A stretch of DNA of 64,000 nt from Macrostomum lignano (GCA_002269645.1 NIVC01000020.1:1485500-1549499), one strand, 5' to 3'; counted from the first letter of the stretch, positions 1 to 24,943 are shown. Made by a program: numbers and translations. Notes: a model not told the origin generated them from the sequence alone.

Positions 1-191
1 AGGGCAGCCAGCCGCTGTTCTACGTGTACCACGTGATCATCCTGCTGCTGCTGCTGCTGTGCCTGGCCTACCACCGCTGCTTCGCCTTCCGGCTGGCCTC
101 CACAGCCGTTATCGAGGAAGATGAAGAGGATGTTCGGGAAGCAGCCGAGAGGCCTCTGATCGAAGGCGGCCAGCAGGCGGCCGGCAGATGA
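1..191 (+). CDS. 3' end of SLC15/POT-like transporter paralogue (copy 0, partial)
   Basis: The frame from base 3 reads GSQPLFYVYHVIILLLLLLCLAYHRCF...EDEEDVREAAERPLIEGGQQAAGR*, matching the KPLFFVYHLIA...YHK C-terminus of the six full copies. TGA at 189-191 is followed by AATAAA at ~205. Confidence 0.85.
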   Translation, partial: GSQPLFYVYHVIILLLLLLCLAYHRCFAFRLASTAVIEEDEEDVREAAERPLIEGGQQAAGR

Positions 192-360
192 TATCGGGAT
201 TTGCAATAAAAGCAAAAAATCCGAACTTTTTAATGAATTTTTCAACTCGTCTGACCTGTGCAATCAAACATTTATCTCACTTTAATAAGTATTTCATAGT
301 GTTTTAAATACATTCTCTCTCGTAAATTTCGATTCTCTTTTTCACTGGTTGAGTGAGAAC

Positions 361-460
361 TTGACTTACTTGACTTAGCTGAAGGAGGCGTTCGGCGGAT
401 GCAACGAGGAGGCGGAGGAGACCCCCCATTTCGCTAGCCCCTGGCGACCAATGACTTCCA
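361..460 (-). mobile_element. 100-bp 5'-truncated LINE 3' end (LOA-like family) with 12-bp TSD
   Basis: It starts with the same TTGACTTACTTGACTTAGCTG tail as the LINE at 25926 and shares CCCATT-CGCTAGCCCCTG. It is flanked by TTGAGTGAGAAC (349-360) and TTGAGCGAGAAC (461-472). Confidence 0.75.
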
Positions 461-1069
461 TTGAGCGAGAACATTCTCTAAGTGTTTTGATAATGTAGGT
501 GATTTTAGCATAAAGAAGCAGCATGGACTTGCGAATACAGACCCCACAGGTGGCCTGAGCATGGCCCCGTACAGCCTGCTGTTGTAGGCAGCCATAGGCC
601 TGACCGACAGCTTTGATCTGTCGCGGTAGTCACGACACAGCGATTGACACTCCTGCGGATGTCTGCACAGTGCGCTGAGGTCTTGGCCGTTCCTCAGCCC
701 ATCTGATGCCACCTCCGTGCGTTTGAACCGTTCATGATGTCGAGCCCTCTTGACTGAGCTGTTGCTGCTGCTGTTTCCACCATTTCTCAAAGCGCAGCAG
801 GATAGGAAATGCTCATCTCACAGCATCTTACAGCAAATATTTTTATAAAAATCTATTAAATTCCAGTAATTCACGTTTACTGCACTTTTAAAATTGCAAT
901 ATAGAAGTCAGTAATATTTCATTTTTTTCAGTTTGGTGTCGAAAATTAGGGCGGAAAAGTACCTGAATAACAAAAGAACGGTGCATCAATTGACATAAGG
1001 CTTTGAGCATTAATACTGGCATCTTTTGAGAAACACGAAGCATTATCCTGCTCGATGCCGAAAGCGAAG

Positions 1070-2494
1070 TCAGATCACGCCTTCTAACAAGTGTCTCTCC
1101 TCCGGATTCAGCCCAGGCTCTCTTGAATCATCATCATCTAACTGCTCGGATTCCGTGTCACAGGGCTCGGCGTCCGCGATCTGCACAGAAATCGGCAGCG
1201 TGACCAGCTTGTGATAGAAAAAGCAGGCAGTCAGCGACAGCACCGCAATCAGGTGGTAGATGAAGAACGGCGGTCTCGATCCAGTGTGGTATTCATTGAT
1301 TCCATTTACCATGCAAACCAGACCATGACTCACATAGTTGGCGAGTCCCCAGACTGTGAACATGACCCCGAGGATCAGGCACTGCGAGCTGTCTGGCAGA
1401 AGCGAGCACCCGAGGTCGTAGGCCGCGACCATGACCAGCAGCTCGGCAGCTCCGTCCAGAACGGACATTAGGGAGTACACGGCTACAGTTGCAGTTGGAG
1501 AGCTCAGTCCAACTAGGGTCACAATGATGAGGCAAACATCAACTGAGCACTTCAGTAGGATTCCAGTCAGAATTCGAGACTTTACGTCCAGCTTCCGTCG
1601 GCTCTTGACCGCAGCAATTATCATCGGCAGAGCCAGGACGTCAATACTGACGCATTTTATCCCGTTAGGTGCCAGCCATGTGTGCGCGACAGCATCCGCG
1701 GTCTCATTCATAAAGTACTTCATTTCTGATAGATAAACTTGCGATCGAGAGTCGCTCAGGAAGGTCATGAACAAAATTAGTGCAGAGAAAATTTGGAAGT
1801 ACTTCAACATCCTGCTTTTCGTGGGCAATTCGAACGGGTACTCTCGAAGCTCCGGCAGAAACGCAGTCAGCGTTAGGAAGGCGAGGCTCACGGCCACGAA
1901 CACGAGGGTGAAGCTGTGTCCGAGCACGCTGACGCACCCAAACTGCAGGAACGGCGAAGACACCAGCTCCCCGAAAGCTGCAACGGCACAATAGATTGTT
2001 GCGGTCACTGTGCACAGCCTGCTCCTTCTGTGCCAGCAGAACATGGCCATGAGAACGGACGGTTGAACGAGTCCAAAGAACACGGGTAGGAGCAGCCAGG
2101 TAATGATAACCACCGGCGAGTCCTGGCACATCAGGCCGAGAAACACCGACACGGACATCAGCACTGTCGACAGCAGCATCACTGCGCCACCAAGCTGGAG
2201 GACCCGCTTGCATCCGAACCAAGCACTGGACATGAAGCCTCCAACAATTGGCAGAATGTAGCGGGAAACGTAAATCCACTCCGTGATTCTGTCTGTTAGC
2301 CTGTCAGATGGACTGTCGGCCTGGCTACCATTAAAGTAGCAAGTTTCGCCTGCTGACATCATGCCATTGTTAGTAAAGTTACTGCTGCGGTGGAAGTGGG
2401 CTGGATTGAACGCTCTGAACTCCCGTTCGACGAGCTTGTTTAGTATCTTCATCTGGGCGGCCATGACAATGCTTAGCCCTGCTGTGGAGGTCAT
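1070..2494 (-). CDS. SLC15/POT (PTR2)-like MFS transporter, copy 1, intronless, 474 aa
   Basis: About 12 hydrophobic segments. YILPIVGGFMSSAWFG resembles the POT TM2 motif YxxPLLGGxxADxxLG, and GAAELL...YDLGCSLLPDSSQCLILGVMF resembles the TM10-11 motif GxxEIF...EFxYxxAPxSMxSxxxGLF. Confidence 0.8.
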   Translation of the reverse strand: MTSTAGLSIVMAAQMKILNKLVEREFRAFNPAHFHRSSNFTNNGMMSAGETCYFNGSQADSPSDRLTDRITEWIYVSRYILPIVGGFMSSAWFGCKRVLQLGGAVMLLSTVLMSVSVFLGLMCQDSPVVIITWLLLPVFFGLVQPSVLMAMFCWHRRSRLCTVTATIYCAVAAFGELVSSPFLQFGCVSVLGHSFTLVFVAVSLAFLTLTAFLPELREYPFELPTKSRMLKYFQIFSALILFMTFLSDSRSQVYLSEMKYFMNETADAVAHTWLAPNGIKCVSIDVLALPMIIAAVKSRRKLDVKSRILTGILLKCSVDVCLIIVTLVGLSSPTATVAVYSLMSVLDGAAELLVMVAAYDLGCSLLPDSSQCLILGVMFTVWGLANYVSHGLVCMVNGINEYHTGSRPPFFIYHLIAVLSLTACFFYHKLVTLPISVQIADAEPCDTESEQLDDDDSREPGLNPEERHLLEGVI

Positions 2495-3212: not shown

Positions 3213-4640
3213 TTAGGGGCGATCAAGCAAAGGGCGCGTTTCTACATCAGAGTCCGCGTCATCCACGATCTGGTCGTGTTCGGCCGCGTCAATCTCATCT
3301 TCCTCGCTGAGGGCGGTCATGTGACTGGCAGTCGGCAGCGTGACGAACTTGTGATGGCAGAAGCAGCCGATCAGCATCACCAAGGCGATCAGGTGGTAAA
3401 CGAAAAACAGCGGCTTCGATCTTTTTCGCGATTTGTTGACGTCGACTAAAAGCCGAAAGAGTCCCCGACTGACAAAGTTCGAAACTCCTCTGACAGTGTA
3501 CATGACGCCGAGGATCAGGCACTGCGAGCTGTCTGGCAACAGCAGACACCCGAGGTCGTAGGCCGCAACCATGACCAGCAGCTCAGCAGCTCCGTCCAGA
3601 ACGGACATTGTCGAGTAAATGGCAAGTACTACTGTGACCGAGGCCGAATCGAATGAGGTGACAATGATGAGGCACAGTTCGATTGCACACTTCAACAGAA
3701 TTCCAGGCAGCATGCGAGACGGAGCAGCCAGCCTCCGCCTGCTTATGACAGCTGCAAGCATCAAAGGCAGGGACAGAACCAGAAAACTCGTGCACTTAAT
3801 AAACTCCGGGGACAGCCATCTCTGCTCCACGATACTAAGAGTTCCATTCAAAAGATAGTTCAATTCGGATTTGTAAACTGCAGGCCTTTCGTCACCCTCA
3901 AAGGCTAAAAATAGTATCAGCGCTGAAAAGATCTGGAAGTACTTGATCATCCGTCTAGTCGTTGGCAGTTGAAATGGCTCTTCCTCGCGGATTTCTGGCA
4001 TGAATGCCGTCAATGTAAGAAACGCGATGCTCACCACTATGAACACCAGAGTAAAATTGCGTCCAAGAGTGTGTTCTGATGCGAAATACCTGTACACAAA
4101 CGGCATGGATATCATCTCTCCAAGAATAGCAAATGCGTAGTACGTGGTAGTCATCACAGTGCACAGTTTATCTTTGCGGTGCCACCGAAATATAGCGAGC
4201 AGAATGTTGGGCTGGTTGAGTCCGTAGAACACTGGCAGGAGCAGCCACGTGATGATGATAACGGGCGAATCCTGGCACATCAAATCGAACTTCACAGAAA
4301 AAGCGAAAAGTACAGTCGACAGTAGCATTGCATTTCCTCCGAGCTGGAGGACTCTGACGCAGCCGAGCCAGGCGCTGGACACCAGCCCGCCCAGCACAGG
4401 CAGCAGGTATCTCCCGGTGTACAGCCATGACGTGGCCAAATGCATGGCTGTGGGCGCTCCAGCTAAACTGGCATCGAAGTAACACGTCTCTTTGGAGTTT
4501 GAGACTGCCGGACCATTGCTTGTGTGGTTCTTTCTATGAAAGTGGGCCGGATCCAACGTGCTGAATTCCAGTTCGACAAGTTTGCACATCAGCTTCATCA
4601 GGCAAGCCACGAAAATGCAGTGCCCAGCTCGGATTTGCAT
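3213..4640 (-). CDS. SLC15/POT-like transporter, copy 2, 475 aa
   Basis: Intact ORF collinear with copy 1 (YLLPVLGGLVSSAWLG, LMCQDSP, KYFQIFSAL, DGAAELL, KPLFFVYHL). Confidence 0.8.
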   Translation of the reverse strand: MQIRAGHCIFVACLMKLMCKLVELEFSTLDPAHFHRKNHTSNGPAVSNSKETCYFDASLAGAPTAMHLATSWLYTGRYLLPVLGGLVSSAWLGCVRVLQLGGNAMLLSTVLFAFSVKFDLMCQDSPVIIITWLLLPVFYGLNQPNILLAIFRWHRKDKLCTVMTTTYYAFAILGEMISMPFVYRYFASEHTLGRNFTLVFIVVSIAFLTLTAFMPEIREEEPFQLPTTRRMIKYFQIFSALILFLAFEGDERPAVYKSELNYLLNGTLSIVEQRWLSPEFIKCTSFLVLSLPLMLAAVISRRRLAAPSRMLPGILLKCAIELCLIIVTSFDSASVTVVLAIYSTMSVLDGAAELLVMVAAYDLGCLLLPDSSQCLILGVMYTVRGVSNFVSRGLFRLLVDVNKSRKRSKPLFFVYHLIALVMLIGCFCHHKFVTLPTASHMTALSEEDEIDAAEHDQIVDDADSDVETRPLLDRP

Positions 4641-5976
4641 GATTTCCTTCAGCAGAAAATGCTCTTACCGTGCTAGATGATGCTTCTAATACATTTTTGC
4701 GATGACGCATAAATCTATTTACTCACTTCAAGCCCGTCGCTGTGCCAATGTGTCGTACATGCACTCATTCTGCGCCTCGCGGGGACTGAAAACAGCCTTC
4801 TCTCTGTGCACTCCAGTTCCACTCACCAGTGCGCTTTAGACGCCCGTACGACCCTGAAATGCACAGGCCTCGAGGGACCAATTAGCGGTCCTCCTGCGTG
4901 TTTGCTGTGCATGAACCACTGTGCGCAAACGCTCTGCGGAAGCGTGCAGACACCCTCGGCCAGCCCACTGCGCATCTCGGGAATAAGTTATTAAGAGCCA
5001 GCATCAAAATGTGCATTATTCTATTATTCTTAATTACCATCTGAATAAATATTTTGACAAGCATTCGACAATTGCATACGGTGGTGTGACACAACTGGAA
5101 CTCTGGGGTAAACAGCATTTGGGAGCTGCGACCCACTCAGTGCCAGCACTGCACAGGCTGTACACCACGGAGCCCCCGGAACAACCCTCGGACGCGCCAC
5201 AATTGCAGCGTCTGTGCGCTTGGCTGTATTTGGCACAGTTGCGGCGAGCCGGGCGTACGCATGCATATGAACCAGAAATACCTATACGAAAATGCATACT
5301 TGCAGCTTCCAAGCGAGTGGCAAGTAGGTAAATGATTAGAATCACCCAGCCCAAACTAGAATATTTACATCTACACTGCCGATTAAATTTCGTTTCAGTT
5401 ACATTGGCCGATACAAAAATTCTGTGCAGACTGCGCGCTGACTTATGTGATGGAGGACTAGCCCTGCCCCCCCCCCCGTCACTCTGAAGTTGCCACGCTC
5501 GTGCGCTTGTAACCACCCGGTAAAATATTAGGGATTTACAGCGGCTTTGAATTTAAAGGACTCAAAGTTCGTTTGGAGAGATTTTTGCCAGACTAAATAT
5601 GATCCTTGGATGGATCTGTTGCCAGCCGGTTAATCAATAGAAATAGCGCAGTTTTACTTTTAGTAAGTTGCGGATAGATTGGGCTCAGATGATCAATATT
5701 CAAGCACATTAAATAATAAAAATACCATAGAACGAGCTAATTTAGCGAGCGAGGCGAATCAAGCACCCGGGGATGCTTTTATGACAGTTAAAGATCAAGG
5801 ACCACTAGCACACGATCTTTGAGTGTAGCGTCCTGATATACTGCTAGTGGTCCTTGTCAATGATTTGCATTGTTGTGGCTATAATAAATGTGAGATTAGG
5901 AAGTTGAGAAGAACAAAATATATTGTTGCGAAATGGGAGCTGCAACTGAGGTTGGATTTTCTGGAAAAATTGTGGG

Positions 5977-6434: not shown

Positions 6435-7868
6435 TCAGTCAAGTATACTCCGCAGTTCCGGGTTCGAGTTCTCATTATCAGGATCGTCTTCTAACTGTTC
6501 ATCGGCGGCCGCATCGAGCTCAGCCTCTTCGCTGAGTTCGGCCATCCGATCAGCCATCGGCAAGGTGACGAACTTCTGGTACAGAAAGCCAGCGGACAGC
6601 AGCAGCAGGGCAATGAGGTGGTAAACGAAGAACAACGGCTTAGATCCATTTTGGAAATTATTGAGCTGCTTTGAAATGCGAAGCAAGCCCGCACTGACAA
6701 AAATTGCGAGGCCCCATACAGTGAAAATGATGCCGAGAAGCAGGGCCTGTGCGTTGCCTGGCAACAGCAAGCACCCGAGATCGTAGGTCGCAACTGTCAC
6801 CAGCAGCTGGGCCACTCCGTTGAGAATAAACGTAATGATGTACACGCTAGCAGTTGTAGACGCGTGTGTCAGTCCGACTAAGGTCACAATAAGTAGAGAC
6901 AGCTCAATTGCACACTTCAGCAGGATTCCAGAAAGCATCCGAGGCGCCACGGGAAGTCTCCTACCGCTCATTGCTGCTATCAATATCAGGAGCGGTGCTG
7001 TGACAACGAGAGTGACATCTCTGACCCAGGAAGGCGAGAGCCAAGGACGTTCAGTAGTGTCGACCGTTTCCCGCATGAAGAAGCTCATTTCAGACAGGCT
7101 GATGGCCGAACGGGCGTCATTCAACACAGCAAAAATCGGAATAAGCGCTGAAAAGATTTGGAAGTACTTCATCAACCGCTGCTTGCTTGGCAATTCGAAC
7201 AGACCCTCCTCGGGTACTTGTGGAATGAAGGAAGCCAACAATTGGTAGGCGAGGCTTATTGCAACGAATGCCAGCGTGAAGTTTCTGAGAACGCTCGTCC
7301 TTGGGAAATGCTCGCAGACAAACGCCGCGGACACCAAATCGCCGATTGCGGCGATAGCGCAATAGGCTGCCGTCACTGCGGTGCACAGCCTGCCTCTTCT
7401 GTGCCAGCAAAACAATGCCATCAGAATATTCGGCTGGTTGAGTCCGTAGAACACTGGCAGGAGCAGCCATGTGATGATGGTGATGGGCGAGTCCTGGCAC
7501 ATCAGGCCGAGGTGCACAGACACGGCCAGGAGGACCGTCGAGAGCAGCATTACGGCGCCACCGATCTGAAGAACTCTGACGCAGCCGAGCCAGGCGCTGG
7601 ACACCAGCCCGCCGAGAACGGGAATCAGGTACCTGGCAGAGTACAGCCATGATGTCGTCAGCTGAATGCCTGTTGGTCGATCAGCCTTCCTGAGCTCATA
7701 ACTGCACAGCCCATCATAGTTTGCTTGTGCCGGGGCATTTTCACTGATGTTTTTCCAATAGAAATGCTCAGGGCTCAAAAAACTGAACTCAATTTCAACA
7801 AGCTTGAACAGAAGCTTCATCAGACTGGCAAGAAGTAAGCACCTCCAAGGTTGCGCGCTCATAGTCAT
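6435..7868 (-). CDS. SLC15/POT-like transporter, copy 3, 477 aa
   Basis: Intact ORF with the same motif series as copies 1 and 2. Confidence 0.8.
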   Translation of the reverse strand: MTMSAQPWRCLLLASLMKLLFKLVEIEFSFLSPEHFYWKNISENAPAQANYDGLCSYELRKADRPTGIQLTTSWLYSARYLIPVLGGLVSSAWLGCVRVLQIGGAVMLLSTVLLAVSVHLGLMCQDSPITIITWLLLPVFYGLNQPNILMALFCWHRRGRLCTAVTAAYCAIAAIGDLVSAAFVCEHFPRTSVLRNFTLAFVAISLAYQLLASFIPQVPEEGLFELPSKQRLMKYFQIFSALIPIFAVLNDARSAISLSEMSFFMRETVDTTERPWLSPSWVRDVTLVVTAPLLILIAAMSGRRLPVAPRMLSGILLKCAIELSLLIVTLVGLTHASTTASVYIITFILNGVAQLLVTVATYDLGCLLLPGNAQALLLGIIFTVWGLAIFVSAGLLRISKQLNNFQNGSKPLFFVYHLIALLLLSAGFLYQKFVTLPMADRMAELSEEAELDAAADEQLEDDPDNENSNPELRSILD

Positions 7869-12636: not shown

Positions 12637-14031
12637 CTACGCTACACTCAACAGAGGACGCTCTTCTTGATTGAGTTCATCGCCTGAATAATTACCGTTG
12701 CTCTCATCCTCCTCGCTGAGGACCATCATCTGGTCCGCAGTCGGCAGGATGACGAACTTGTAATAGAAAAAGGTGGCAGTCAGCGTCAGCACGGCGATCA
12801 GGTGGTAGATGAAGAGCAGTGGCTTCGATCCGTTTCGCTCTTTGTTCAGTTCGAATATAATGAAAAACAGTCCCCGACTCAGATAGTTGGCGAACCCCCT
12901 GGCTGTGAACATGACGCCGAGGATCAGGCACTGCGAGCTGTCTGGCAGAAGCGAGCACCCGAGGTCGTAGGCCGCGACCATGACCAGCAGCTCGGCAGCT
13001 CCGTCCAGAACGGACATCAGGGAGTACACGGCCACAGTTGCAGCTGGAGAGCTCAGTCCAACTAGGGTCACAATGATGAGGCAAACATCAACTGAGCACT
13101 TCAGTAGGATTCCAGTCAGAATTCGAATCTTTACGTCCAGCTTCCGTCGACTCTTGACTGCAGCAAATATCAGGGGTACTGCTAGAACTACCAGGGCCAG
13201 ATCTTTCACCCAGTCAGGTGACAGCCACGGCTGGGTCTCAATGTCAATCGTCTCGTTCGTAAAGTATCTCATTTCAGACAGATAAATGGTGGGCCGGTCG
13301 TCATCCAGAAATATCAGAATCAGATTCAGCGCCGAGAAGATCTGGAAGTACTTTAGCATTCTCCTTCTGGTCGGAAGCTCGAAAGGTTCTTCTTCATGAA
13401 TTTCCGGTAAGAGCCCTGTTAGCGCCAGGTAGGCGAGGCTCGCTCCCACGAACACAAAAGTGAAGCTGTTGCCGAGAACATTGGTGGATAAAACATACTT
13501 GTATAGAAAGGTCCCGGACATCAAGTCCCCGAATCCTGCCATGGCATAGTAGATTGATGTCGATACGGTGCAGAATTTGTCATTTCTGTGCCAACAGAAA
13601 AATGCCAGCATAATGTTGGGCTGTACAAGACCAAAGAACACAGGCAGGAGCAGCCACGTTATTACGATTATAGGCGAGTCCTGACACATCAAGCCGAAGT
13701 GCACAGACACGACCAGGAGGACCGTCGAGAGCAGCATTACGATGCCACCGATCTGAAGAACTCTGACGCATCGAATCCAGGCGCTGGACACCAGCCCGCC
13801 CAGCACAGGAAGCAGGTATCTCCCGGTGTACAGCCACAGTGTAGCCGTCCGCATGCCCGAGGGAGCTTCAGCTTGGCTAGCGTTAAAGTAGCACTTCGGC
13901 TCACTGTCGGTCGAAAAGTTGTTCAGCTGGAAGTGGCTCGGATCCAGCGATCTGAACTCGATTTCAACAAGCTTGTATAAAAGCTTCATCACACTGACGA
14001 CAAATATGCAGTTCCGAGCTTGAGTACTCAT
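12637..14031 (-). CDS. SLC15/POT-like transporter, copy 4, 464 aa
   Basis: Intact ORF with the same motif series. Confidence 0.8.
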   Translation of the reverse strand: MSTQARNCIFVVSVMKLLYKLVEIEFRSLDPSHFQLNNFSTDSEPKCYFNASQAEAPSGMRTATLWLYTGRYLLPVLGGLVSSAWIRCVRVLQIGGIVMLLSTVLLVVSVHFGLMCQDSPIIVITWLLLPVFFGLVQPNIMLAFFCWHRNDKFCTVSTSIYYAMAGFGDLMSGTFLYKYVLSTNVLGNSFTFVFVGASLAYLALTGLLPEIHEEEPFELPTRRRMLKYFQIFSALNLILIFLDDDRPTIYLSEMRYFTNETIDIETQPWLSPDWVKDLALVVLAVPLIFAAVKSRRKLDVKIRILTGILLKCSVDVCLIIVTLVGLSSPAATVAVYSLMSVLDGAAELLVMVAAYDLGCSLLPDSSQCLILGVMFTARGFANYLSRGLFFIIFELNKERNGSKPLLFIYHLIAVLTLTATFFYYKFVILPTADQMMVLSEEDESNGNYSGDELNQEERPLLSVA

Positions 14032-14797: not shown

Positions 14798-16126
14798 ATG
14801 GAGGGAACTGGAAATCGAGAGTCAGAGTTTGACTCATCCGCTGTAACTCATGTAGCTCTGATTCTCAGTATGAAGCTGTGCAGTCAGGCCGTTCAGGCTT
14901 ACCTTTCGCGCATGGATCCGGAACATTTTCACATGCGCAACGGCAGCTGCTATCTAGATGGAGCTCAGGTCGCCGAGAATTTAGCTCACGCTACCGAGTT
15001 CTGGGCCTCTCTTCTCCCTGTGTTGGGCGGCCTACTTTCATCTATCTGTCTGGGATACATCTCTGTGATGCAGCTAGGCGGCTTTGGGTTCATCTTGAGC
15101 TCTGTGCTCATGTCCATTGCCGAAAGCATGGACTGGATGTGCAGCCATCCCAAGCTCAGCCATGCACTGTGGGTCCTGCCGACACTGAGCGCCGGCATCG
15201 CCGAGCCGGCCATCGTCTACGGAGCATTTCGGTGGCACGGGCAATGTCCCAGAATCCGCACCATGGTTATCGCGCTGCTGTTCCTGTGTGACAAAGTCGG
15301 CGAGCACGTCGGCACCTTACCTTGGCCGGAAATCTTAGGAACAAATCACATCCTATTTGCCATCGCATCGAGCATTGTCTACACTATTCTGTCAATCTCT
15401 TTGCAAGAGTATTCGCACGAGAGTCCTTACAGAATACCAACTTTCAACCGCATCGTACGGTACGCAAAGATCTTCTCCTCTCTGACTATATTCACAGCAG
15501 TGCAGGCTGACTACCACTGGAGGATCTACGCCCAGGAACTAAAAGTTCTCGTTGGGATAGATCTCAAAGACTGGAGCCTGTCGTTGAGGTCCCCGAGTGT
15601 CTTCGGATTGGCTGGGTTTTTCTCGTGCGTCATCGCCACAGTGGCTCTCAGCCGCCAATTTTCTCTGCCCATTCAGCTCAGGATATATGCAGGCATTGTT
15701 TTGGGGCTGCTCAGCTCCACCTTTCTTGCAATTTTCACCGCGGCTTTCGCCGCTTCAAGTGATCCCAGCCTGCTAAACATCTGGCTGCTGGTCTCACTAT
15801 GCGATGGCGTTGCGTACTGTCTCATCACGGTGGCCTATTTTGAGTTCACGGACTCCATCACGAGCCAGGAGTTCAAGCCGTTTGTTATTGGCATCTTGCT
15901 CACCATCTGGGGCATCGGCGGCGCTTTCAGCGAGCTTTCTCGCCAGCTGTTCGACAATGTGCCCATCGACAATCCGATCGGCAAGCCGGCTGCTGGCAGG
16001 AAGCCGCTGTTTTTTGTGTACCACTTGTTCGCGGTTGGGCTACTGGCTGGCAGCCTCCTCTACCACAGGTTCTTGTCGCTTAAATGGTCCGAAACACTTC
16101 TTTCGGAATCAGAAGATACTATCTGA
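14798..16126 (+). CDS. SLC15/POT-like transporter, copy 5 (most divergent), 442 aa
   Basis: MKLCSQ, DPEHF, LLPVLGGLLSSICLG, RYAKIFSSL and KPLFFVYHLFA are all present. A 3' splice-type site (CTACTACAG) lies 2 nt before the ATG. Confidence 0.75.
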   Translation: MEGTGNRESEFDSSAVTHVALILSMKLCSQAVQAYLSRMDPEHFHMRNGSCYLDGAQVAENLAHATEFWASLLPVLGGLLSSICLGYISVMQLGGFGFILSSVLMSIAESMDWMCSHPKLSHALWVLPTLSAGIAEPAIVYGAFRWHGQCPRIRTMVIALLFLCDKVGEHVGTLPWPEILGTNHILFAIASSIVYTILSISLQEYSHESPYRIPTFNRIVRYAKIFSSLTIFTAVQADYHWRIYAQELKVLVGIDLKDWSLSLRSPSVFGLAGFFSCVIATVALSRQFSLPIQLRIYAGIVLGLLSSTFLAIFTAAFAASSDPSLLNIWLLVSLCDGVAYCLITVAYFEFTDSITSQEFKPFVIGILLTIWGIGGAFSELSRQLFDNVPIDNPIGKPAAGRKPLFFVYHLFAVGLLAGSLLYHRFLSLKWSETLLSESEDTI

Positions 16127-16406
16127 TCTCAGAAACTTTGACGAGTCTTTTAGTAGCAGATTCGGTATGAAGTATGCAAAACGTATCTATATGTTGTTCA
16201 AAAGACACAAATGCTTTGCTTTATTGAGGCTTTCTATTAATAAAACCAACAGTCAATACAATAAAAAGCTTTTCAATGTAGCTCGTAATTACAAATCCTT
16301 TGTTATAAATACTTCGTGGTGACAGAAAGCAGACACATCATATGTATGGATAGTATATTCGCACGCATGTGCATCCGAAAGTCATGTCACATAGAGATGT
16401 CTGCAA

Positions 16407-18120: not shown

Positions 18121-19734
18121 ATGAGCCGCGAGTTCCTCCTGGAAGAGAAGATCATCGCCGTCAAGAAGTCGCACTTCGAAGGCGTTGGAGTGGTCGGTGG
18201 CTTGGACAGAGGTACCAAAGATTATTACTTTGCTATAATTTCTCTTTACTAAACATACCAATACTGTAAGCGATCAATACCAATACTGAAATCTCGATAC
18301 CACCAGGCTGCACGCTGACAAAGGTCCTGTTCAGCACCGTGAAGGATGATGAGCATTACAACCTGCACTTCGCTCTGTTCAAGAACTCTCACTTCGAGGC
18401 CGGCTTGGACTACCTAAAGGAGAAGGGCATGGTTGTTCAGGTTCCCGGAGCGAAGCTGCACGTCACTGGAGCTGGTTGCGACATGAACCGCGAGCTGATC
18501 AAGCAGAAGCTGGGACTCGAGTACGTTGAATTGTGCATTTTGTTTCTTATGAGTCACTTTTAGAGGAAGAAGGTCAATCATGGGTGAATAGTCTAAGCTT
18601 TGCATCCCAGTAATGTGCTGCACACTCCCACTTTAGAATCCAATTCATCAACGAGTTCCTTACGCAAGGCCGCGGCACCCACTGGCTGCTTAGCTGCGCT
18701 GATGACTCCGAGATCTGCTACCCGGAGCCTGAGATCGATTTATCGGAGTTTGAGAGCCTCAAGTCGAACAACTTCCTTGATCAACTAGTGAAGAAGTGGA
18801 AGCGGGACATCGGTGAACCTATTGAGGGGCAGAAGTTTCCCTGCGTCATGCTTTTCATGGGATCTGGCGCCGGCATTCTCAGGGCAAGTTGTCAATCAAA
18901 TATGCGGGAAACTGAGAAGGATCTGGCGTAATCGGAGCACACAATCTTATGGAGTATGTCACGCAAATTTGCTTTCTCAGATCGAGGAGAACGGAATGTC
19001 CGACATGGTCGGCGGCGTCTGGTTCGCTGGTCGCAGCTTCCTTGGCCTGAGCAAGCTGCTGCTGGGCACCGATGACTACGATGAGATCCTGGAGCTGGCC
19101 AGCAAAGGCAAGCGAAACAGCGTCGATACGGAGGTCAAGGACGTCATTGCCAACGATCCGAACTCGCCGTACGGCCAGTTTCCGCCGAATCTTCCCATAT
19201 TTTCGTTCGGCAAAGTGATCGACACCGACAAGAAGCGTAAGCTGTATCAGAATTTTGGTCTCTTGAAGTTTTATGCCTGTGTATTTGCTTTATGAAATAA
19301 AGGGAGCAATTTGATTGGCTTCTTGCATGCAGTATCTGACCTGTCTCGCGAAGACCTCGCCAACTCGCTGGTGTTCAGCTTCGCCTACAACGCATTCAGC
19401 CAGCTGGCGCTGGTAGCCCAGACCTCAAAAGTGTCCAAACTGTACATGGGTGGCAACTTCTTCCGTCACGAGCTCATCCGGAGCGAGATTGTGAAGACAA
19501 TGCGGCTCTTCACAGGCGTAAGTGTGCTAGATTTCTGTGGTTGGCAGACAATTTTCTTAGAAATAATGTCTCTTTTTGCTTGCAAATTGTCAGGACGCAA
19601 TCGCGGTGAATTTCGTGAAGACTGGTCACACCGGAGCCATTGGCGCCATGATCAGCAAGCCGGAGGACGAGCTCAAGTACCTGGCCTTCATGCAGCAGGC
19701 TGAGCAGCAACCGACTCAGGGAGCAAGCTCTTGA
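18121..19734 (+). CDS. Divergent type II pantothenate-kinase-like (fumble/ASKHA) kinase, paralogue A; exons 18121-18211, 18307-18520, 18637-18883, 18981-19236, 19333-19517, 19594-19734 (377 aa)
   Basis: The spliced frame is open throughout. Motifs and their PanK counterparts: GLDRGCTLTK (DIGGTLxK), VTGAG (TGGG), INEF (DEL), FMGSG (NIGSG), ELASKGKRNSVDTEVKD, FSFGK, SREDLA, GGNFFR and TGAIGAM. Confidence 0.85.
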
Positions 19735-20040
19735 CTGATTGATTGATTTATGAATGATCAATAGCCAGAAACTTCTCTATTTTATTCTATAAGAACATTA
19801 TAGCGGTATGAGATATCACATCTCTATGATTGTTATAGTAAATGCTTTAGTTCAGTTGTGATTTTCTATAAACAGTTATTTAGATTATAGTGTAACAATG
19901 TTTACAAGCACGAAAGTATCTAATAGTCCTCACCTATTCAAAATAGCAACTGCAAATACATCAATGGTGTCCATGCACGCTAAATCCATTCAACGAGCTC
20001 TTCAAAGACATTTCGAAAGAGACTGAGAGGTTTCAAAACG

Positions 20041-20643
20041 GAGTTAAGGCACAGAGCAGAGCCCGGATCCGAGCGGAGTCGAGGCACAGAGCAGAGCCCG
20101 GATCCGAGCGGAGTTGAGGCACAGAGCAGAGCCCGGATCCGAGCGGAGTCGAGGCACTGAGCAGAGCCCGGATCCGAGCGGAGTTGAGGCACTGAGCAGA
20201 GCCCGGATCCGAGCGGAGTTGAGGCACTGAGCAGAGCCCGGATCCGAGCGGAGTTGAGGCACAGAGCAGAGCCCGGATCCGAGCGGAGTCGAGGCACAGA
20301 GCAGAGCCCGGATCCGAGCGGAGTTGAGGCACTGAGCAGAGCCCGGATCCGAGCGGAGTTGAGGCACTGAGTGGAGCCTGGATCCGAGCGGAGTCGAGGC
20401 ACAGAGCAGAGCCTGGATCCGAGCGGAGTTGAGGCACTGAGTGGAGCCTGGATCCGAGCGGAGTCGAGGCACAGAGCAGAGCCCGGATCCGAGCGGAGTT
20501 GAGGCACAGAGCAGAGCCCGGATCCGAGCGGAGTTGAGGCACAGAGCAGAGCCCGGATCCGAGCGGAGTTGAGGCACAGAGCAGAGCCCGGATCCGAGCG
20601 GAGTTGAGGCACAGAGCAGAGCCCGGATCCGAGCGGAGTCGAG
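20041..20643. repeat. 35-bp minisatellite (GAGCGGAGTTGAGGCACAGAGCAGAGCCCGGATCC), ~17 copies
   Basis: Head-to-tail units with point variants and no unique spacers. Confidence 0.97.
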
Positions 20644-21448
20644 GTGCGGAGTGGGGTCAGAATTTTGGTCCAGTTTACGTATCTGCGGATAAATAAAGGC
20701 CTTGACTTGGTTTTATTGTGGAGTATCATTCATAAAGTCGCTGTTACTTGGCACAGGGCCGCTTGACAATCGAAAGCGTATCTGCTATCATATTAGGGTG
20801 TTAATAGCTAAGAAAAGTCAGCAAAAGACGCTTGAGCACAAGGTCGCAGCTAAATTGACACACTGGTACAATCTCTGTGCCAGTACAAATGAGGGCACAC
20901 CAATACGAACTGGGACCAGCAGTTAAAGAATTTACCAGGCGATCAGTTGTTGCTCTACCCGTGCACTTTGCTGGGCAAATAGCGCATAATGAGACAGCAG
21001 CTGATTAGATACGGGCTATTGGGCTCATCGAGAGCTTTGACTCGCCTGACAACACGAAAGGTTTCGCCTGCGTCCCAAGGAGCTGGGCTGGAGTTGAATT
21101 AAATTATCTTATTTCATTGCTTTGCCTGAAAACAAAGAAAACTCGAAGAGCGGCTGCTCAAGCCAACACAAGTTCATTGCACAGAATTGGAAATGCGTTT
21201 AGAAAGAGGCAGGTCTGTAATCAAAAGTGAGAGCTCGAGCTATCGAGCCTGAGCTGCGCCAAATATGGGAGTGGAGCAACGATAAGAAGAAAGAAATCGA
21301 CCAAAAGGAGCAAGCAGACGCGATAAGAGAAAGTTAGCGCTATTCGTTACTTAAACAAGCGTACTTGATTCCCCGTGTCTGCCGCTTCACTAAGTATTCG
21401 TTTATAGAAATTTTTTTTTGATTCGCAGTACCACCCGCAGGTGCATCA

Positions 21449-23040
21449 ATGAGCCGCGAGTTCCTCCTGGAAGAGAAGATCATCGCCGTCAAGAAGTCGC
21501 ACTTCGAAGGCGTTGGAGTGGTCGGTGGCTTGGACAGAGGTACCAAATATTATTATGCAACACTATTTTTAACTAAACATACCAATATTGGTACTTGTGC
21601 CTGTAAGCGTATTTTAAATCTCGGTGCCACCAGGCTGCACGCTGACAAAGGTCCTGTTCAGCACCGTGAAGGATGATGAGCATTACAACCTGCACTTCGC
21701 TCTGTTCAAGAACTCTCACTTCGAGGCCGGCTTGGACTACCTGAAGGAGAAGGGCATGGTTGTTCAGGTACCCGGAGCGAAGCTGCACGTCACTGGAGCT
21801 GGTTGCGACATGCACCGCGAGCTGATCAAGCAGAAGCTGGGACTCGAGTACGTCCCACTGAAGCAATGAGCACACAGAAGTTGGATTGGTAATTAACTCT
21901 TGCTGCAAAACTGTCTCTCCCCTATTCAGAATCCAATTCATCAACGAGTTCCTCACGCAAGGCCGCGGCACCCACTGGCTAATAGGGTGCGCTGATGACT
22001 CCGAGATCTGCTACCCGGAGCCCGAGCTGGATATGTCCGAGTTTGAGGGCCTCCAAGCAAACAACTTCCTACAAAAACTAATTGAAAAGGCTAAGAAAGA
22101 CCTCGGAGAGCCCATAGAGGGCCAGAAGTTTCCCTGCATGATGCTGTTCATGGGATCTGGTGGTGGAATAATGAAGGTCAGTTAAAATGGAAGACTTTTG
22201 TAGAAGAATATGCAATAACAGCAAAGTTCACTTGGATCATTCGGTTTAAACAACAAAAAATCAGATCGAGGAGAACGGAATGTCTGACATGGTCGGTGGA
22301 CTTTGGTTCGCCGGTCGCAGCTTCCTTGGCCTGAGCAAGCTGCTGCTGGGCACCGATGACTACGATGAGATCCTGGAGCTGGCCAGCAAGGGAAGGCGAA
22401 ACAATGTCGATACGGAGGTGAAGGACGTCCTTGCCAACGATCCGAACTCGCCGTACGGTCAGCTTCCGCCGAACCTTCCTGTCTTTCCGTTCGGCAAGGC
22501 GGTTGATACTGACAAGACACGTAAGGGTGTAAAGCACATGTTTAGGAGTGGAAAAGTACGTATGACTGAGTGAAAGTCAACAAAGTTATTACATTGGACC
22601 CTAACCCATTAATACAGTGGCTGACCTGAGCCGAGAAGACTTGGCGAACTCCATCGTGTTCAGCTTTGCGTACAACGCATTCACAAACTTGGCTTTGGCG
22701 GCTCAGACTTCCAAGATCCCCAAGCTCTACATGGGCGGCAACTTTTTTCGCCACGAGCTCATTCGAGCCGAGATTCTTAAGAGCGTGCGCCTTTTCACTG
22801 GCGTAAGCTTCGTTCATTATTCGTAAATATTTTTTGAAAACCAGACTTGCCTTTTATCGATTCAAAACTGTTTACTGCTGATGCAATTCGCAGGAGTCAA
22901 TCGCGCTGAATTTTCTGATTACTGGCCACACTGGAGCCATTGGCGCCATGATCAGCAAGCCGGAGGACGAGTTCAAGTACCTGGCCTTCATGCAGCAGCA
23001 GGCTCAGCAGGCGCCCGACGGAGCCAACTCTCCAGCTTGA
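21449..23040 (+). CDS. Pantothenate-kinase-like kinase, paralogue B; exons 21449-21539, 21634-21847, 21930-22176, 22265-22520, 22618-22802, 22894-23040 (379 aa)
   Basis: Exons 1-5 have the same lengths as in paralogue A (91/214/247/256/185) and all introns are GT-AG. The spliced frame is open, and AATAAA lies at ~23209. Confidence 0.85.
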
Positions 23041-23569
23041 CCAATGGTGGCTGATTGGGACTGAGCATGTTTGAACTTTTCGAATTGTTGCAATACAAAG
23101 AATTCTTAAGATTTAGATTATATTCATGTTTTTGCACTTGCTGATTTATTTCTGGTATGCTACTCCTACCGAGCTTGGTTGATGAGCGTACAGCCCATAC
23201 TTTATTAAAAATAAAGACTACGCTCGTACCAGTATTTCTGAGAAAATTTAATCAGTCTAAAGTCTCTTCCAGAAAAACCCAGAAAATGCCTGCACTTGTA
23301 CAGGTGTAGAGCAGCTATGTACAATATTCATAGCCACCGCTGCACAATACGAATACACTAGCTGCTATTTAAGTACAGTGCGCACATTGATACAATAATG
23401 TACGCTTCCTATTGCTCTTATTTCAACCCTTTAACGAAATAGACCCGGCTTTCTCACCTAAACAATCGAGTGCTCGCATTCTCGATGCAATAAAATAAAC
23501 TGCTCGCTGCACGGTCAGGCATCAGAACTTTGCGCAGCGGAATCTGTCCTCACAATAACCGATTGAAGA

Positions 23570-24943
23570 ATGCGAGTCCACGCTCTGAGAGGCGTTCTCT
23601 TGGCTTGCTTGATGAAGCTTTGCACCAAGATAACTGAAACGTTATTTACGATAGAAGATCCATCAAACTTTCGGCTGTCGGACGAAGCCGGCTCTTTAAA
23701 TGAATCGTGCCATTTCTCCACTGAGCTATCAGCAACCAACTCTCAAGCATCAATCACTACGTGGATCTACACCTTAAGATACTCACTGCCAGTACTTGGT
23801 GGGCTGATCTCCAGCGTTTGGTTTGGAACTGTTGCCGTACTTCAGATCGGCGGGATTTTTATGCTGCTGTCGACTGTGCTGCTATCCGTATCGGTGTACC
23901 TCGGATTCATGTGCCAAGCATCGCCAATAATTACAGTCACATGGCTACTGCTTCCAGTGTTCTACGGGCTCACTCAACCGAGCATAGTACACTGCATGTT
24001 CAGCTGGTTCAAGCGGCCGAAGTTTTTCACAATTGTATCAGCAACATATTATGCAGTTTCCGTAACCGGAAAATACATCGCGCTGTTGTTGTTGCCACTG
24101 AACAAAGCTGAGTGGTTGGGACCTAATTCGTCTGTCATCTACATTGCAATAAGCGTACTGTTCGTTGCCTTGCCGTCTTTCTTCCCGGTAGTGTCCCGCG
24201 AAGAACCATTCGAAATGCCAACCCTATTTAGAATGAGCAGGTACTTCCAGATCTTCTCTGTCCTCATAATATTCCTTTTTGCCGTCGACGACACCAGATC
24301 TGCTGTCTACGCAACGGAACTTGAGTATTATCTCAACGCGACAGCGAATATCGAGACCTACTTCTGGCTTTCCCCGAAAACACAAAACCTCTCTGCCATG
24401 CTGGTCAGCTGCGTGGCTCTGATAATTGCTGCCTCCATCAGCCGACGGCAGCTTCCCGTTGGGCTTCGGATGCAGGCCGGGATCCTCCTCGGAGCTGCGG
24501 TTGCAGCGAGTCTCACCGTCTTCACCGCGGTCGCTAAAAAGCCCGGCTACTCGGCTGTGGTCACTGTTTACACGGCAGCCTCTATCCTAGATGCAGCTGC
24601 TGAGGTTCTGGTCATGACCGGTGCCTACGACCTGCTTCAGCAGATTACGCCTGGTGGTACCGAGTCTTTCGTCATCGGGATCATGTTCACTGTGTGGGGT
24701 CTGGCCAACCTCGCTAGCCAGGTGGCCCTTCTAACGATGTCTCGATGGCTGCAGCCGCTGGACGACGATCATCCCAAACTGTTTGTGTACCACCTCGTGT
24801 CGGTCATGCTGCTTCTGGTCTGCTCTGCTTACCACAAAATCATTGCTCTGCCTCTGGCAGCTCAGGTGACCCCTACAGAAATATTGAATGAGGAAGAGAC
24901 AGTAAGTGAGCTGCAACCTCTGCTGAGTTCAGATGACGTATGA
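23570..24943 (+). CDS. SLC15/POT-like transporter, copy 6, 457 aa
   Basis: MKLCTK, DPSNF, YSLPVLGGLISSVWFG, FMCQASP, DAAAEVL and LFVYHL are all present. AATAAA lies at ~24966. Confidence 0.8.
   Translation: MRVHALRGVLLACLMKLCTKITETLFTIEDPSNFRLSDEAGSLNESCHFSTELSATNSQASITTWIYTLRYSLPVLGGLISSVWFGTVAVLQIGGIFMLLSTVLLSVSVYLGFMCQASPIITVTWLLLPVFYGLTQPSIVHCMFSWFKRPKFFTIVSATYYAVSVTGKYIALLLLPLNKAEWLGPNSSVIYIAISVLFVALPSFFPVVSREEPFEMPTLFRMSRYFQIFSVLIIFLFAVDDTRSAVYATELEYYLNATANIETYFWLSPKTQNLSAMLVSCVALIIAASISRRQLPVGLRMQAGILLGAAVAASLTVFTAVAKKPGYSAVVTVYTAASILDAAAEVLVMTGAYDLLQQITPGGTESFVIGIMFTVWGLANLASQVALLTMSRWLQPLDDDHPKLFVYHLVSVMLLLVCSAYHKIIALPLAAQVTPTEILNEEETVSELQPLLSSDDV

What the first reader, a model, noticed from the sequence alone, without database searches (positions are those of the whole stretch)
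1..24943. Candidate animal metabolic gene cluster: two altered-specificity PanK-like kinases embedded among seven altered POT/SLC15-like transporters
Seen: seven transporter paralogues and two kinase paralogues in 25 kb, every complete copy with an intact frame and no unrelated protein-coding gene recognised between them. Kinase B ends only 529 bp before transporter 6, on the same strand. Known: POT/SLC15 proteins import peptides or export them from lysosomes, and type II PanK phosphorylates pantothenate. Inference: both families have lost canonical substrate residues (see the next findings), which fits a transport-then-phosphorylate module for a non-canonical small molecule, such as a vitamin-like or diet-derived compound released in the lysosome or gut phagosome. 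Functional clusters of unrelated gene families are uncommon in animals.
Basis: partly seen in the sequence, partly recalled or inferred. Interest (0 to 1): 0.82.

Follow-up and report, generated by a model that had tools for sequence, protein, structure and literature searches.

The report
Flatworm transporter array with embedded PanK-like kinases
In 25 kb of Macrostomum lignano (flatworm) DNA, seven copies of a highly diverged peptide-transporter-like gene surround two copies of a diverged pantothenate-kinase-like gene; all complete copies look functional, but no evidence shows the two families work together.

Summary
Window 1-24943 holds six intact intronless transporter ORFs, one C-terminal fragment cut by the window edge, and two intact six-exon kinase genes. 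Kinase B ends exactly 529 bp before the last transporter, on the same strand.

The family assignments hold.
- The kinases belong to the Fumble / type II PanK family. They keep the ATP-binding motifs and catalytic Glu138 but lack the pantothenate-positioning Arg207 and Ser195.
- The transporters are 12-helix MFS proteins. Their only significant relatives with solved structures are POT/SLC15 proteins, with SLC15A4 and SLC15A3 on top. The ExxER proton-coupling motif is replaced.
- Both families show purifying selection (dN/dS 0.1-0.4).

The "metabolic gene cluster" reading is not supported by the tests I could run.
- Six other loci carrying a member of either family show no linkage to the other family.
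- The kinase pair duplicated alone and more recently than the transporters.
- A 97-98% identical public contig lacks two transporters and one kinase.
- The kinase clade also occurs outside the named M. lignano records, in sequences of unknown origin. The transporter family has no named member outside Macrostomum.

The most likely reading is two independent lineage-specific tandem expansions that happen to be interleaved. A transport-then-phosphorylate module, possibly a kinase B-transporter operon, remains possible (about 0.2). Interest is moderate.

The parts
3..191 (+). T1p: C-terminal 62 codons plus stop of a seventh transporter paralogue, cut by the window edge
   Evidence: The translation GSQPLFYVYH...AERPLIEGGQQAAGR* matches the family's C-terminus.
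1070..2494 (-). T2: intronless POT/SLC15-derived MFS transporter, 474 aa
   Evidence: Intact ORF, aligned with the family. dN/dS against paralogues is 0.24-0.34. It shares a conversion tract of about 270 bp at 97-100% identity with T5.
3213..4640 (-). T3: transporter paralogue, 475 aa
   Evidence: Intact ORF. The copy on public contig L001 carries two 1-bp insertions in short homopolymers.
6435..7868 (-). T4: transporter paralogue, 477 aa (the copy modelled)
   Evidence: The AlphaFold2 model has pLDDT 81.9 and pTM 0.83 and shows a 12-helix MFS fold. The best Foldseek match is PHT1/SLC15A4 8cni_B (E 2.2e-8, TM 0.68).
12637..14031 (-). T5: transporter paralogue, 464 aa
   Evidence: Intact ORF. 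It lies in the 7.6-kb segment missing from L001.
14798..16126 (+). T6: most divergent transporter paralogue, 442 aa, lacking the C-terminal dileucine motif
   Evidence: Intact ORF, 25-28% identical to the others. Absent from L001.
18121..19734 (+). kinA: PanK-like (Fumble) kinase, 377 aa. Exons: 18121-18211, 18307-18520, 18637-18883, 18981-19236, 19333-19517, 19594-19734
   Evidence: Spliced model with an open frame, using four GT-AG introns and one GC-AG intron. A rough pre-splicing concatenation of its exon ORFs hits Pfam Fumble at E 7.7e-30. Absent from L001.
20039..20644 (.). 35-bp minisatellite (17 copies) between the two kinase genes
   Evidence: TRF score 1072. The array is longer in L001.
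21449..23040 (+). kinB: PanK-like (Fumble) kinase, 379 aa. Exons: 21449-21539, 21634-21847, 21930-22176, 22265-22520, 22618-22802, 22894-23040
   Evidence: Matches BOX15_Mlig034563g2 (P0001) at 377 of 379 residues. A rough pre-splicing concatenation of its exon ORFs hits Pfam Fumble at E 6.7e-32. The AlphaFold2 model of P0001 has pLDDT 87.8 and matches only type II PanKs.
23041..23569 (+). 529-bp spacer between kinB and T7, same strand, within the distance used to call operons in M. lignano
   Evidence: The sequence was read directly and contains AATAAA at 23209. The operon criterion comes from PMC8629364. SL trans-splicing of T7 was not testable.
23570..24943 (+). T7: transporter paralogue, 457 aa
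   Evidence: Intact ORF. It is also intact in L001 (97.8% aa identity, dN/dS 0.37).

Best explanation
The region is a tandem array of a Macrostomum-restricted, highly diverged offshoot of the POT/SLC15 transporter family. A locally duplicated pair of PanK-like small-molecule kinases sits inside it. The two families expanded independently, and their interleaving is most likely a by-product of local duplication in a duplication-prone genome rather than a selected pathway cluster.

Each gene is probably functional in its own right.

The transporters are 12-helix MFS carriers. Most carry a C-terminal acidic-dileucine sorting signal (E-x-x-x-L-L), which points to endolysosomal or phagosomal membranes (inferred). 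They have replaced the proton-coupling ExxER acids with Lys, keep an acidic residue at the TM10 position that binds a peptide's amino group, and keep the R-x-x-x-G motif before TM8. They probably move a non-peptide, or at least non-canonical, amine-bearing solute without classical proton coupling (inferred).

The kinases are cytosolic ASKHA kinases with intact ATP-binding motifs and the catalytic Glu. They lack the Arg that clamps pantothenate's carboxylate. They probably phosphorylate a hydroxyl on a different small molecule, perhaps one that is neutral at that end (inferred).
For: **Identity and integrity**
- Intact ORFs and splice models.
- dN/dS is 0.10-0.20 for the kinases and 0.17-0.42 for the transporters.

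**Family assignment**
- Fumble E about 1e-30. Fold matches are only PANK1-3, Cab1 and SaPanK.
- The extended transporter profile hits SLC15A4/A3 at E 2.5e-7, and only POT proteins appear below E 0.04.
- The top Foldseek hit for the transporter model is PHT1/SLC15A4.
- The M. lignano paralogues P0013 and P0014 still carry ERxxYY-like TM1 motifs.

**Independent histories**
- The kinase duplication unit is 18112-19707 vs 21440-23010, which is the gene body only.
- kinA-kinB dS is 0.42, against transporter dS of 0.85 to above 3.
- Contig L001, 97-98% identical, lacks T5-T6-kinA.

**No linkage elsewhere**
- Loci L002, L011 and L013 (transporters) and L003-5, L009 and L010 (kinases) show no member of the other family.

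**Different taxonomic ranges**
- The kinase clade has members of 35-41% identity in metatranscriptome and Logan contigs of unknown organisms.
- An exhaustive profile search over 1.84 billion cluster representatives found only 10 transporter hits. Every hit with a named source organism is M. lignano.
Against: - Two diverged, substrate-altered families that could logically act in sequence do sit together.
- kinB and T7 share a strand with a 529-bp gap, inside the 1-kb operon threshold for this species.
- Synteny in other Macrostomum species and expression data could not be examined, so functional coupling is not refuted.
- The paralogue test only shows that linkage is not a general property of the two families.
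Confidence: 0.6

Rival explanations
1. This is a genuine transport-then-trap module. One or more array transporters deliver a small molecule from the gut lumen or endolysosome to the cytosol, and the adjacent kinases phosphorylate it to retain or activate it. The genes are co-regulated, possibly with kinB-T7 as an SL-resolved operon.
For: - The families are adjacent and the kinases are embedded in the array.
- The kinB-T7 gap is 529 bp on the same strand, inside the operon distance for M. lignano, where about 15% of genes lie in operons.
- Both families have lost canonical substrate or coupling residues.
- A C-terminal dileucine motif suggests an endolysosomal location.
- Vitamin salvage by transport followed by phosphorylation is an established logic (general knowledge).
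- Another paralogue (P0007) lies 339 bp from a sulfotransferase, a different hydroxyl-conjugating enzyme.
Against: - No linkage at any of six other loci of either family.
- The kinase and transporter duplications are uncoupled in unit and in age.
- A near-identical contig lacks T5-T6-kinA.
- The kinase clade exists in sequences from unidentified organisms, with no sign of this transporter family beside it.
- An AATAAA 170 bp after the kinB stop suggests the kinase transcript ends on its own.
- T7 is intact in the public assembly yet has no gene call there, while the kinase does.
Confidence: 0.2
2. The kinases are still pantothenate-pathway enzymes acting on pantothenate, pantetheine or pantothenol. 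Another basic residue replaces Arg207. The candidates are the invariant Arg in D-R-G-C and the clade-wide Arg/Lys in F-A-G-[RK]-S-F-L-G-L. The transporters are unrelated neighbours.
For: [quoted passage not shown]
- The fold matches only PanKs.
- Type II PanKs are known to accept pantetheine and pantothenamides (general knowledge; the S. aureus pantothenamide complexes appear among the hits).
Against: - Arg207 is hydrophobic or Gln in all 13 clade members, Ser195 is Gly/Ala/Thr, and Tyr254 is lost.
- The score is less than half the PanK equivalog cut-off.
- Loss of Arg207 is one of the two changes held to inactivate the PANK4 kinase domain (PMC8861153).
- M. lignano has at least three loci of this clade, which is unexpected for a housekeeping step.
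Confidence: 0.12
3. The array transporters are not active carriers. They are either silent or decaying recent duplicates, or signalling scaffolds in the way SLC15A4 recruits TASL, so there is no transport step to couple to a kinase.
For: - None of T2-T7 is in the 15-billion-protein collection and none has a gene call in GCA_002269645.1.
- The T3 and T4 copies on L001 carry 1-bp indels.
- The proton-coupling motif is lost.
Against: - Six long ORFs have stayed open over dS above 1, with dN/dS 0.17-0.42.
- Conserved glycine, proline and charged positions, and NxS/T sequons in predicted luminal loops, are retained.
- The L001 indels sit in short homopolymers and may be long-read assembly errors.
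- Related paralogues are annotated genes.
Confidence: 0.08

Closest known systems
SLC15A4 / SLC15A3 (PHT1/PHT2), endolysosomal members of the POT/PTR2 family (PF00854)
   Same: - 12-helix MFS fold, with the best structural match and the best sequence-profile match.
- The TM2 L-P-x-x-G-G motif and the R/K-x-x-x-G motif before TM8.
- An acidic residue at the TM10 'E-F' position.
- A dileucine-type sorting signal, which suggests endolysosomal membranes.
   Different: - No Pfam PTR2 hit.
- E-x-x-E-R-F-x-Y-Y on TM1 is replaced by K-x-x-x-K-x-x-E.
- The 'A-D' of the TM2 motif is S-S.
- About 100 residues shorter and intronless.
- The sorting motif is at the C-terminus.
- No member with a named source organism outside Macrostomum.
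Type II pantothenate kinases (human PANK1-3, yeast Cab1, S. aureus CoaA; Pfam Fumble PF03630)
   Same: - Fold.
[quoted passage not shown]
   Different: - Arg207 becomes Met/Leu/Val/Phe/Gln, Ser195 becomes Gly, and Tyr254 becomes an aliphatic residue.
- The PANK3 29-80 insertion is absent.
- Clade-specific D-R-G-C, A-G-[RK]-S and T-G-H-T-G-A-I-G-A-M motifs.
- Below the TIGR00555 equivalog cut-off.
PANK4 kinase-like domain
   Same: A Fumble-family domain that has lost Arg207 (PMC8861153).
   Different: PANK4 has also lost the catalytic Glu138 and is fused to a DUF89 phosphatase. The proteins here keep Glu138 and are stand-alone, so they are not expected to be pseudokinases.
Eukaryotic metabolic gene clusters and M. 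lignano SL-resolved operons
   Same: Non-homologous genes lie side by side. One same-strand pair lies within the species' operon distance.
   Different: There is no evidence of a shared pathway, co-expression, conserved linkage or trans-splicing. Linkage is absent at every other locus examined.

Membership tests
POT / PTR2 / SLC15 (PF00854) | Match to the Pfam PTR2 model above its gathering score | tested here: not met
   None of the six ORFs hits PTR2. They give only sub-threshold MFS_1 matches. The distant relative P0016 reaches 28.9 bits against a cut-off of 27.
POT / PTR2 / SLC15 (PF00854) | Significant, specific sequence-profile similarity to solved POT transporters | tested here: met
   The profile of the window copies plus M. 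lignano paralogues hits SLC15A4 at 2.5e-7 and SLC15A3 at 2.8e-7. All 22 hits up to E 0.04 are POT/NPF proteins, and other MFS families appear only at E 0.69 or above. The window-only profile gives only SLC15A4 at E 2.2, so the link depends on the intermediate paralogues.
POT / PTR2 / SLC15 (PF00854) | ExxERFxYY motif on TM1 (proton coupling and peptide carboxylate; PMC6338836) | tested here: not met
   In alignment A2, P0013 has N-L-L-E-R-S-V-Y-Y and P0014 has A-L-E-R-C-T-F-Y. T2-T7 have K-L-x-x-K-L-V-E at the same columns: E1 becomes Lys, E2 is variable, Arg becomes Lys (Gln in T6), and Tyr becomes Glu (Gln in T6).
POT / PTR2 / SLC15 (PF00854) | TM10 glutamate that binds the peptide amino terminus (E595 in hPepT1) | tested here: inconclusive
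   The aligned position (the Glu in SLC15A4 'G-L-E-F') is Asp in T2-T5 and T7 and Glu in T6 and P0007-P0010. The acidic character is kept, but the alignment is at low identity.
POT / PTR2 / SLC15 (PF00854) | 12-helix MFS fold closest to POT structures | tested here: met
   The model has pLDDT 81.9. The top Foldseek hit is PHT1 8cni_B, and SLC15A4/A3 give the highest TM-scores (0.64-0.69). Other MFS families score nearly as well.
Type II pantothenate kinase (Fumble, PF03630) | Match to the Pfam Fumble model above its gathering score | tested here: met
   104.6 and 111.4 bits against a cut-off of 28.5.
Type II pantothenate kinase (Fumble, PF03630) | NCBIfam equivalog TIGR00555 (panK_eukar) cut-off | tested here: not met
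   115.2 bits against a cut-off of 247.6.
Type II pantothenate kinase (Fumble, PF03630) | [quoted passage not shown] | tested here: met
   D-x-G-x-T, T-G-x-G, G-N-F and Glu138 are kept in kinA, kinB and nearly all clade members. P0026 has T-G-A-D at PHOSPHATE 2, and four members vary the third ADENOSINE residue. The PANK3 sequence was recalled from memory, and its numbering was checked against the residues named in PMC8366970.
Type II pantothenate kinase (Fumble, PF03630) | Pantothenate-contacting Arg207 and Ser195 (PMC8366970) | tested here: not met
   Arg207 is Met in kinA and kinB and Leu/Val/Phe/Gln in other clade members. Ser195 is Gly. Tyr254 is Ile/Leu.
Type II pantothenate kinase (Fumble, PF03630) | Pantothenate kinase activity | not testable with these tools
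   This needs a recombinant enzyme assay.
Metabolic gene cluster (non-homologous genes of one pathway kept together) | Physical adjacency of non-homologous genes | tested here: met
   Nine genes of two families lie in 25 kb with no other recognisable gene between them.
Metabolic gene cluster (non-homologous genes of one pathway kept together) | Linkage maintained at other loci or in other genomes | tested here: not met
   No partner family lies within the flank held (up to 10 kb each side) at L002, L003-5, L010, L011 or L013, or on the 5-kb contig L009. Orthologous loci in other species were not available.
Metabolic gene cluster (non-homologous genes of one pathway kept together) | Co-expression and a shared pathway or substrate | not testable with these tools
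   No expression or biochemical data were available, and a literature search for the gene id returned nothing.
M. lignano operon (criteria of PMC8629364) | Same orientation, repeat-adjusted gap under 1000 bp | tested here: met
   kinB to T7 is 529 bp. T6 to kinA is 1994 bp, which does not meet the criterion.
M. lignano operon (criteria of PMC8629364) | Downstream gene SL trans-spliced | not testable with these tools
   This needs RNA reads. No SL sequence occurs in the window or at the 5' end of the kinase transcript contig L008.

The most novel reading that the evidence does not exclude
kinB-T7, or the whole array, is a co-regulated animal "import-and-trap" module. A POT-derived endolysosomal or gut carrier has lost proton coupling and delivers a diet-derived, non-pantothenate small molecule. 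A dedicated Arg207-less PanK-like kinase then phosphorylates it. This would be a new vitamin-like or xenobiotic salvage pathway encoded as a eukaryotic operon or cluster.
Probability: 0.15. Interest if true: 0.85.

Novelty: new variant of a known kind. Interest (0 to 1): 0.4.

Why it matters
If the two families do act together, this would be a rare animal example of a physically clustered transport-plus-modification pathway. It would also give a route to a new small-molecule salvage route in a tractable flatworm model.

Two uncharacterised protein groups are worth recording even without coupling.
- A PanK-fold kinase clade keeps the catalytic machinery but lacks the pantothenate carboxylate clamp. 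It is found in M. lignano and in several unidentified organisms.
- A Macrostomum-restricted SLC15A3/4-like carrier family has swapped the proton-coupling acids for lysines.

Both are candidates for new substrate specificities in well-studied folds.

Tried and rejected
- **Direct searches with one transporter.** A Pfam scan of all six ORFs, and PDB phmmer, word-indexed homologue and exact-protein searches with T4, gave no significant match (only sub-threshold Pfam MFS_1 hits). Only the exhaustive profile search worked.
- **First splice-model optimiser.** It produced frameshifted models and was replaced by a per-junction search.
- **Structure prediction from spliced kinase sequences.** I used P0001, which is 377/379 identical to kinB.
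- **Spliced-leader search.** There are no matches to the M. lignano SL in the window or in the transcript contigs, so the operon question stays open.
- **Literature search.** Searches for the gene id, and for Macrostomum with PanK or SLC15, returned nothing relevant.
- **Pseudogenes considered and rejected.** Open frames are kept over saturated dS with dN/dS below 0.45.
- **Transposon cargo or foreign DNA considered and rejected.** The kinases have spliceosomal introns, and a paralogous, homeologous or allelic copy exists in the public M. lignano assembly.
- **The UniRef name "Glucokinase" for paralogue P0004.** Nothing here supports it: Pfam and NCBIfam hits are PanK-type only, and the fold of its relative P0001 matches only type II PanKs.

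Full report
**Source and layout**

The window is Macrostomum lignano (free-living flatworm) nuclear DNA. Kinase B matches the annotated protein BOX15_Mlig034563g2 at 377 of 379 residues. The region aligns at 97-98% nucleotide identity to contig NIVC01002260.1 of assembly GCA_002269645.1 (locus L001).

Mechanical ORF listing and tblastn give exactly seven transporter copies in 1-24943 and none elsewhere in the 64 kb:
- T1p, 3-191 (+), a C-terminal fragment cut by the window edge
- T2, 1070-2494 (-)
- T3, 3213-4640 (-)
- T4, 6435-7868 (-)
- T5, 12637-14031 (-)
- T6, 14798-16126 (+)
- T7, 23570-24943 (+)

All six complete copies are single uninterrupted ORFs of 442-477 aa.

The two kinase genes lie between T6 and T7 on the + strand. 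Using P0001 as a guide, I derived six-exon models with open frames. Introns are GT-AG except one GC-AG intron in kinA. kinA spans 18121-19734 (377 aa) and kinB spans 21449-23040 (379 aa).

Between the genes there are satellites, one 274-bp inverted repeat, and a 157-aa ORF with a sub-threshold QRICH1-domain match. Immediately downstream, from about 26 kb, lie LINE-like, Ty3-like and Ty1/copia-like retroelements.

**Are they real genes?**

Yes, most likely.
- kinA vs kinB: dN/dS 0.20 (dS 0.42).
- Either kinase vs a transcript-derived orthologue from another sample (P0002): dN/dS 0.10.
- Transporter pairs: 0.17-0.42, with dS mostly above 1.
- T7 vs its L001 counterpart: 0.37.

One caveat applies to the transporters. 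None of T2-T7 is present in the public protein collections or has a gene call in GCA_002269645.1, although the kinase does. In L001, T3 and T4 carry 1-bp indels in short homopolymers. These could be long-read assembly errors or real lesions. T7 is intact there but still has no gene call. Expression of the array transporters is therefore unverified.

**The kinases**

- A rough pre-splicing concatenation of each kinase's exon ORFs hits Pfam Fumble at E 7.7e-30 (kinA) and 6.7e-32 (kinB). phmmer against PDB with the spliced kinB aligns only the C-terminal half to PANK1-3 (E about 1e-16).
- An AlphaFold2 model of P0001 (pLDDT 87.8) matches only type II PanKs: PANK3, PANK1 and PANK2, then Cab1 and S. 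aureus PanK, at about 20% identity.
- The NCBIfam equivalog model for eukaryotic PanK scores 115 bits against a cut-off of 247.6. These are homologues, not equivalogs.

I aligned the clade to human PANK3. The PANK3 sequence was recalled from memory. Its numbering was checked against the residues named in PMC8366970, and its C-terminal half against the alignment printed. The whole clade (13 sequences) shows this pattern:

| Feature | State in the clade |
|---|---|
| ASKHA PHOSPHATE 1 (D-x-G-x-T) | kept |
| PHOSPHATE 2 (T-G-x-G) | kept in 12 of 13 (T-G-A-D in P0026) |
| ADENOSINE (G-N-F) | G-N kept (C-N in P0029); third residue F in 9 of 13 |
| Catalytic Glu138 | kept |
| Ser192 | kept |
| Arg207 | Met/Leu/Val/Phe/Gln |
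| Ser195 | mostly Gly |
| Tyr254 | mostly aliphatic or Phe (Pro in P0006; not aligned in P0029) |

Arg207 and Ser195 hydrogen-bond pantothenate (PMC8366970). Arg207Trp together with Glu138Val is the reason PANK4's kinase domain is considered dead (PMC8861153). Here only the substrate-side residues are lost, so an active kinase with a changed substrate is the natural reading.

There is a caveat. The clade has two new conserved basic residues next to active-site loops: D-R-G-C, and A-G-[R/K]-S in place of G-G-G-T. Either could substitute for Arg207.

M. lignano has at least two further loci of this clade (Mlig027093 and Mlig007788). Members at 35-41% identity occur in metatranscriptome and Logan contigs from unidentified organisms.

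**The transporters**

- Pfam gives no PTR2 hit, only sub-threshold MFS_1.
- An exhaustive profile search of 1.84 billion cluster representatives found 10 proteins. Every one with a named source organism is M. lignano, and the two weakest (P0015, P0016) are Pfam PTR2 proteins.
- A profile of the six window copies plus M. lignano paralogues hits SLC15A4 (E 2.5e-7) and SLC15A3 (2.8e-7) in the PDB. All 22 hits up to E 0.04 are POT/NPF proteins. Non-POT MFS proteins appear only at E 0.69 or above.
- With the window copies alone, the only hit is SLC15A4 at E 2.2. The link therefore relies on intermediate paralogues. P0013 and P0014 still carry E-R-x-x-Y-Y-like TM1 motifs and G-G-x-x-A-D.
- The AlphaFold2 model of T4 (pLDDT 81.9, pTM 0.83) is a 12-helix MFS. 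Its top Foldseek hit is PHT1/SLC15A4, and its highest TM-scores are to SLC15A4/A3. Other MFS families are close behind.

At the ExxERFxYY columns, T2-T7 read K-L-x-x-K-L-V-E, and the TM2 'A-D' is 'S-S'. The motif's role is described in PMC6338836. An acidic residue persists at the TM10 position aligned to the peptide-amine-binding Glu, and the R-x-x-x-G motif before TM8 is invariant.

Most copies end in an acidic stretch followed by E-x-x-x-L-L/I. That fits the [DE]XXXL[LI] adaptor-binding signal (general knowledge). With the SLC15A3/4 affinity, it suggests an endolysosomal location. This is an inference.

"Altered POT/SLC15-like" is therefore a fair description. By the usual motif and HMM criteria they are not members in good standing.

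**Is it a functional cluster?**

This is the part of the finding that I could test only indirectly, and every available test was negative.

1. *Paralogous loci.* The transporter paralogues have these annotated neighbours:
   - P0007: eIF4E-BP, a sulfotransferase and an unknown gene.
   - P0008: an EGFR-like kinase and a nuclear receptor.
   - P0012: another transporter copy.

   tblastn finds no Fumble kinase in the flank held (up to 10 kb on each side). The kinase paralogues Mlig027093 (three contigs) and Mlig007788 have no transporter in theirs. A 5-kb genomic contig from sample DRR639055 carries a clade kinase next to a GPCR-like gene.
2. *Duplication history.* The only kinA/kinB DNA similarity is 18112-19707 vs 21440-23010, which is the gene body alone. 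The kinase split (dS 0.42) is younger than the transporter splits. The flanking T6 and T7 are the most divergent array members (25-40% identity). The kinases were not duplicated together with a transporter.
3. *Structural variation.* L001 lacks window 12338-19974 (T5, T6 and kinA). One breakpoint lies at the 21-bp satellite. Gene content here is fluid.
4. *Taxonomic range.* The kinase clade is wider than the transporter family.

What remains in favour is adjacency itself, the plausible biochemical logic, and the kinB-T7 spacing. M. lignano has SL-resolved operons, called at under 1 kb same-strand spacing, with about 15% of genes in operons (PMC8629364). However, an AATAAA lies 170 bp after the kinB stop, and trans-splicing of T7 cannot be assessed without reads.

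A transporter array must have some neighbour, and a large share of enzyme classes would have invited the same story. The sulfotransferase next to P0007 is an example. One instance of adjacency is therefore weak evidence.

**Verdict**

The metabolic-cluster inference is unproven and slightly disfavoured.

My best explanation, at confidence 0.6, is two independent lineage-specific tandem expansions that are interleaved by local duplication, with each family functional on a non-canonical substrate. I put a real transport-then-phosphorylate module at about 0.2.

The novelty lies in the two divergent subfamilies (new variants of known kinds), not in a demonstrated new system. Interest is 0.4.

Noticed in passing
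window 1324-1594 (T2) and 12867-13137 (T5), minus strand (CDS nt ~900-1170): T2 and T5 share a tract of about 270 bp at 97-100% identity, against a background of 50-70% over most of the two genes. This looks like a recent gene-conversion tract covering roughly TM8-TM10.
   Followed up: partly
window 12338-19974 vs L001 7699-8073: The public M. lignano contig NIVC01002260.1 lacks the 7.6-kb segment carrying T5, T6 and kinA. One breakpoint abuts the 21-bp satellite at 12124-12338. This is presence/absence variation between haplotypes or homeologues.
   Followed up: partly
L001 1017-2443 and 4148-5578: The L001 copies of T3 and T4 each carry two 1-bp indels in short homopolymer runs. T3 has +1 and +1. 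T4 has +1 and -1. These are either assembly errors or pseudogenisation in that copy.
   Followed up: partly
L002 10001-12721: The closest transporter paralogue outside the array (P0007, BOX15_Mlig032748g1) lies 339 bp from a convergently oriented cytosolic sulfotransferase gene (PF00685), which is another hydroxyl-conjugating enzyme.
   Followed up: no
window 20039-20644: A 35-bp minisatellite (17 copies, 95% matches) lies between kinA and kinB. It creates long spurious ORFs in several frames and is about 1.15 kb long in L001.
   Followed up: no
window 10281-10554 and 10768-11040: A 274-bp inverted repeat at 96.7% identity has arms about 210 bp apart. It is possibly a foldback or MITE-like element.
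   Followed up: no
window 9344-9814 (-): A 157-aa ORF has a sub-threshold QRICH1-domain match (E 1.4e-5, 25.5 bits against a cut-off of 30.8). It is probably a transposon-derived remnant inside the array.
   Followed up: no
window 26037-29177, 31727-33921, 41912-45282 (all -): Three retroelement bodies lie just downstream of the array: a LINE-like RT plus RNase H, a Ty3-like gag and integrase with PT/PAGE repeats, and a Ty1/copia-like gag-integrase-RT. The first element and the sequence up to about 31666 are absent from L001.
   Followed up: partly
L011 282-8997: A second tandem arrangement of the same transporter family (P0012 plus at least one more copy) sits on contig NIVC01000504.1, without kinases.
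   Followed up: no
window 5973-6289: An 11-bp satellite (29 copies) lies between T3 and T4 and generates overlapping spurious ORFs on both strands.
   Followed up: no
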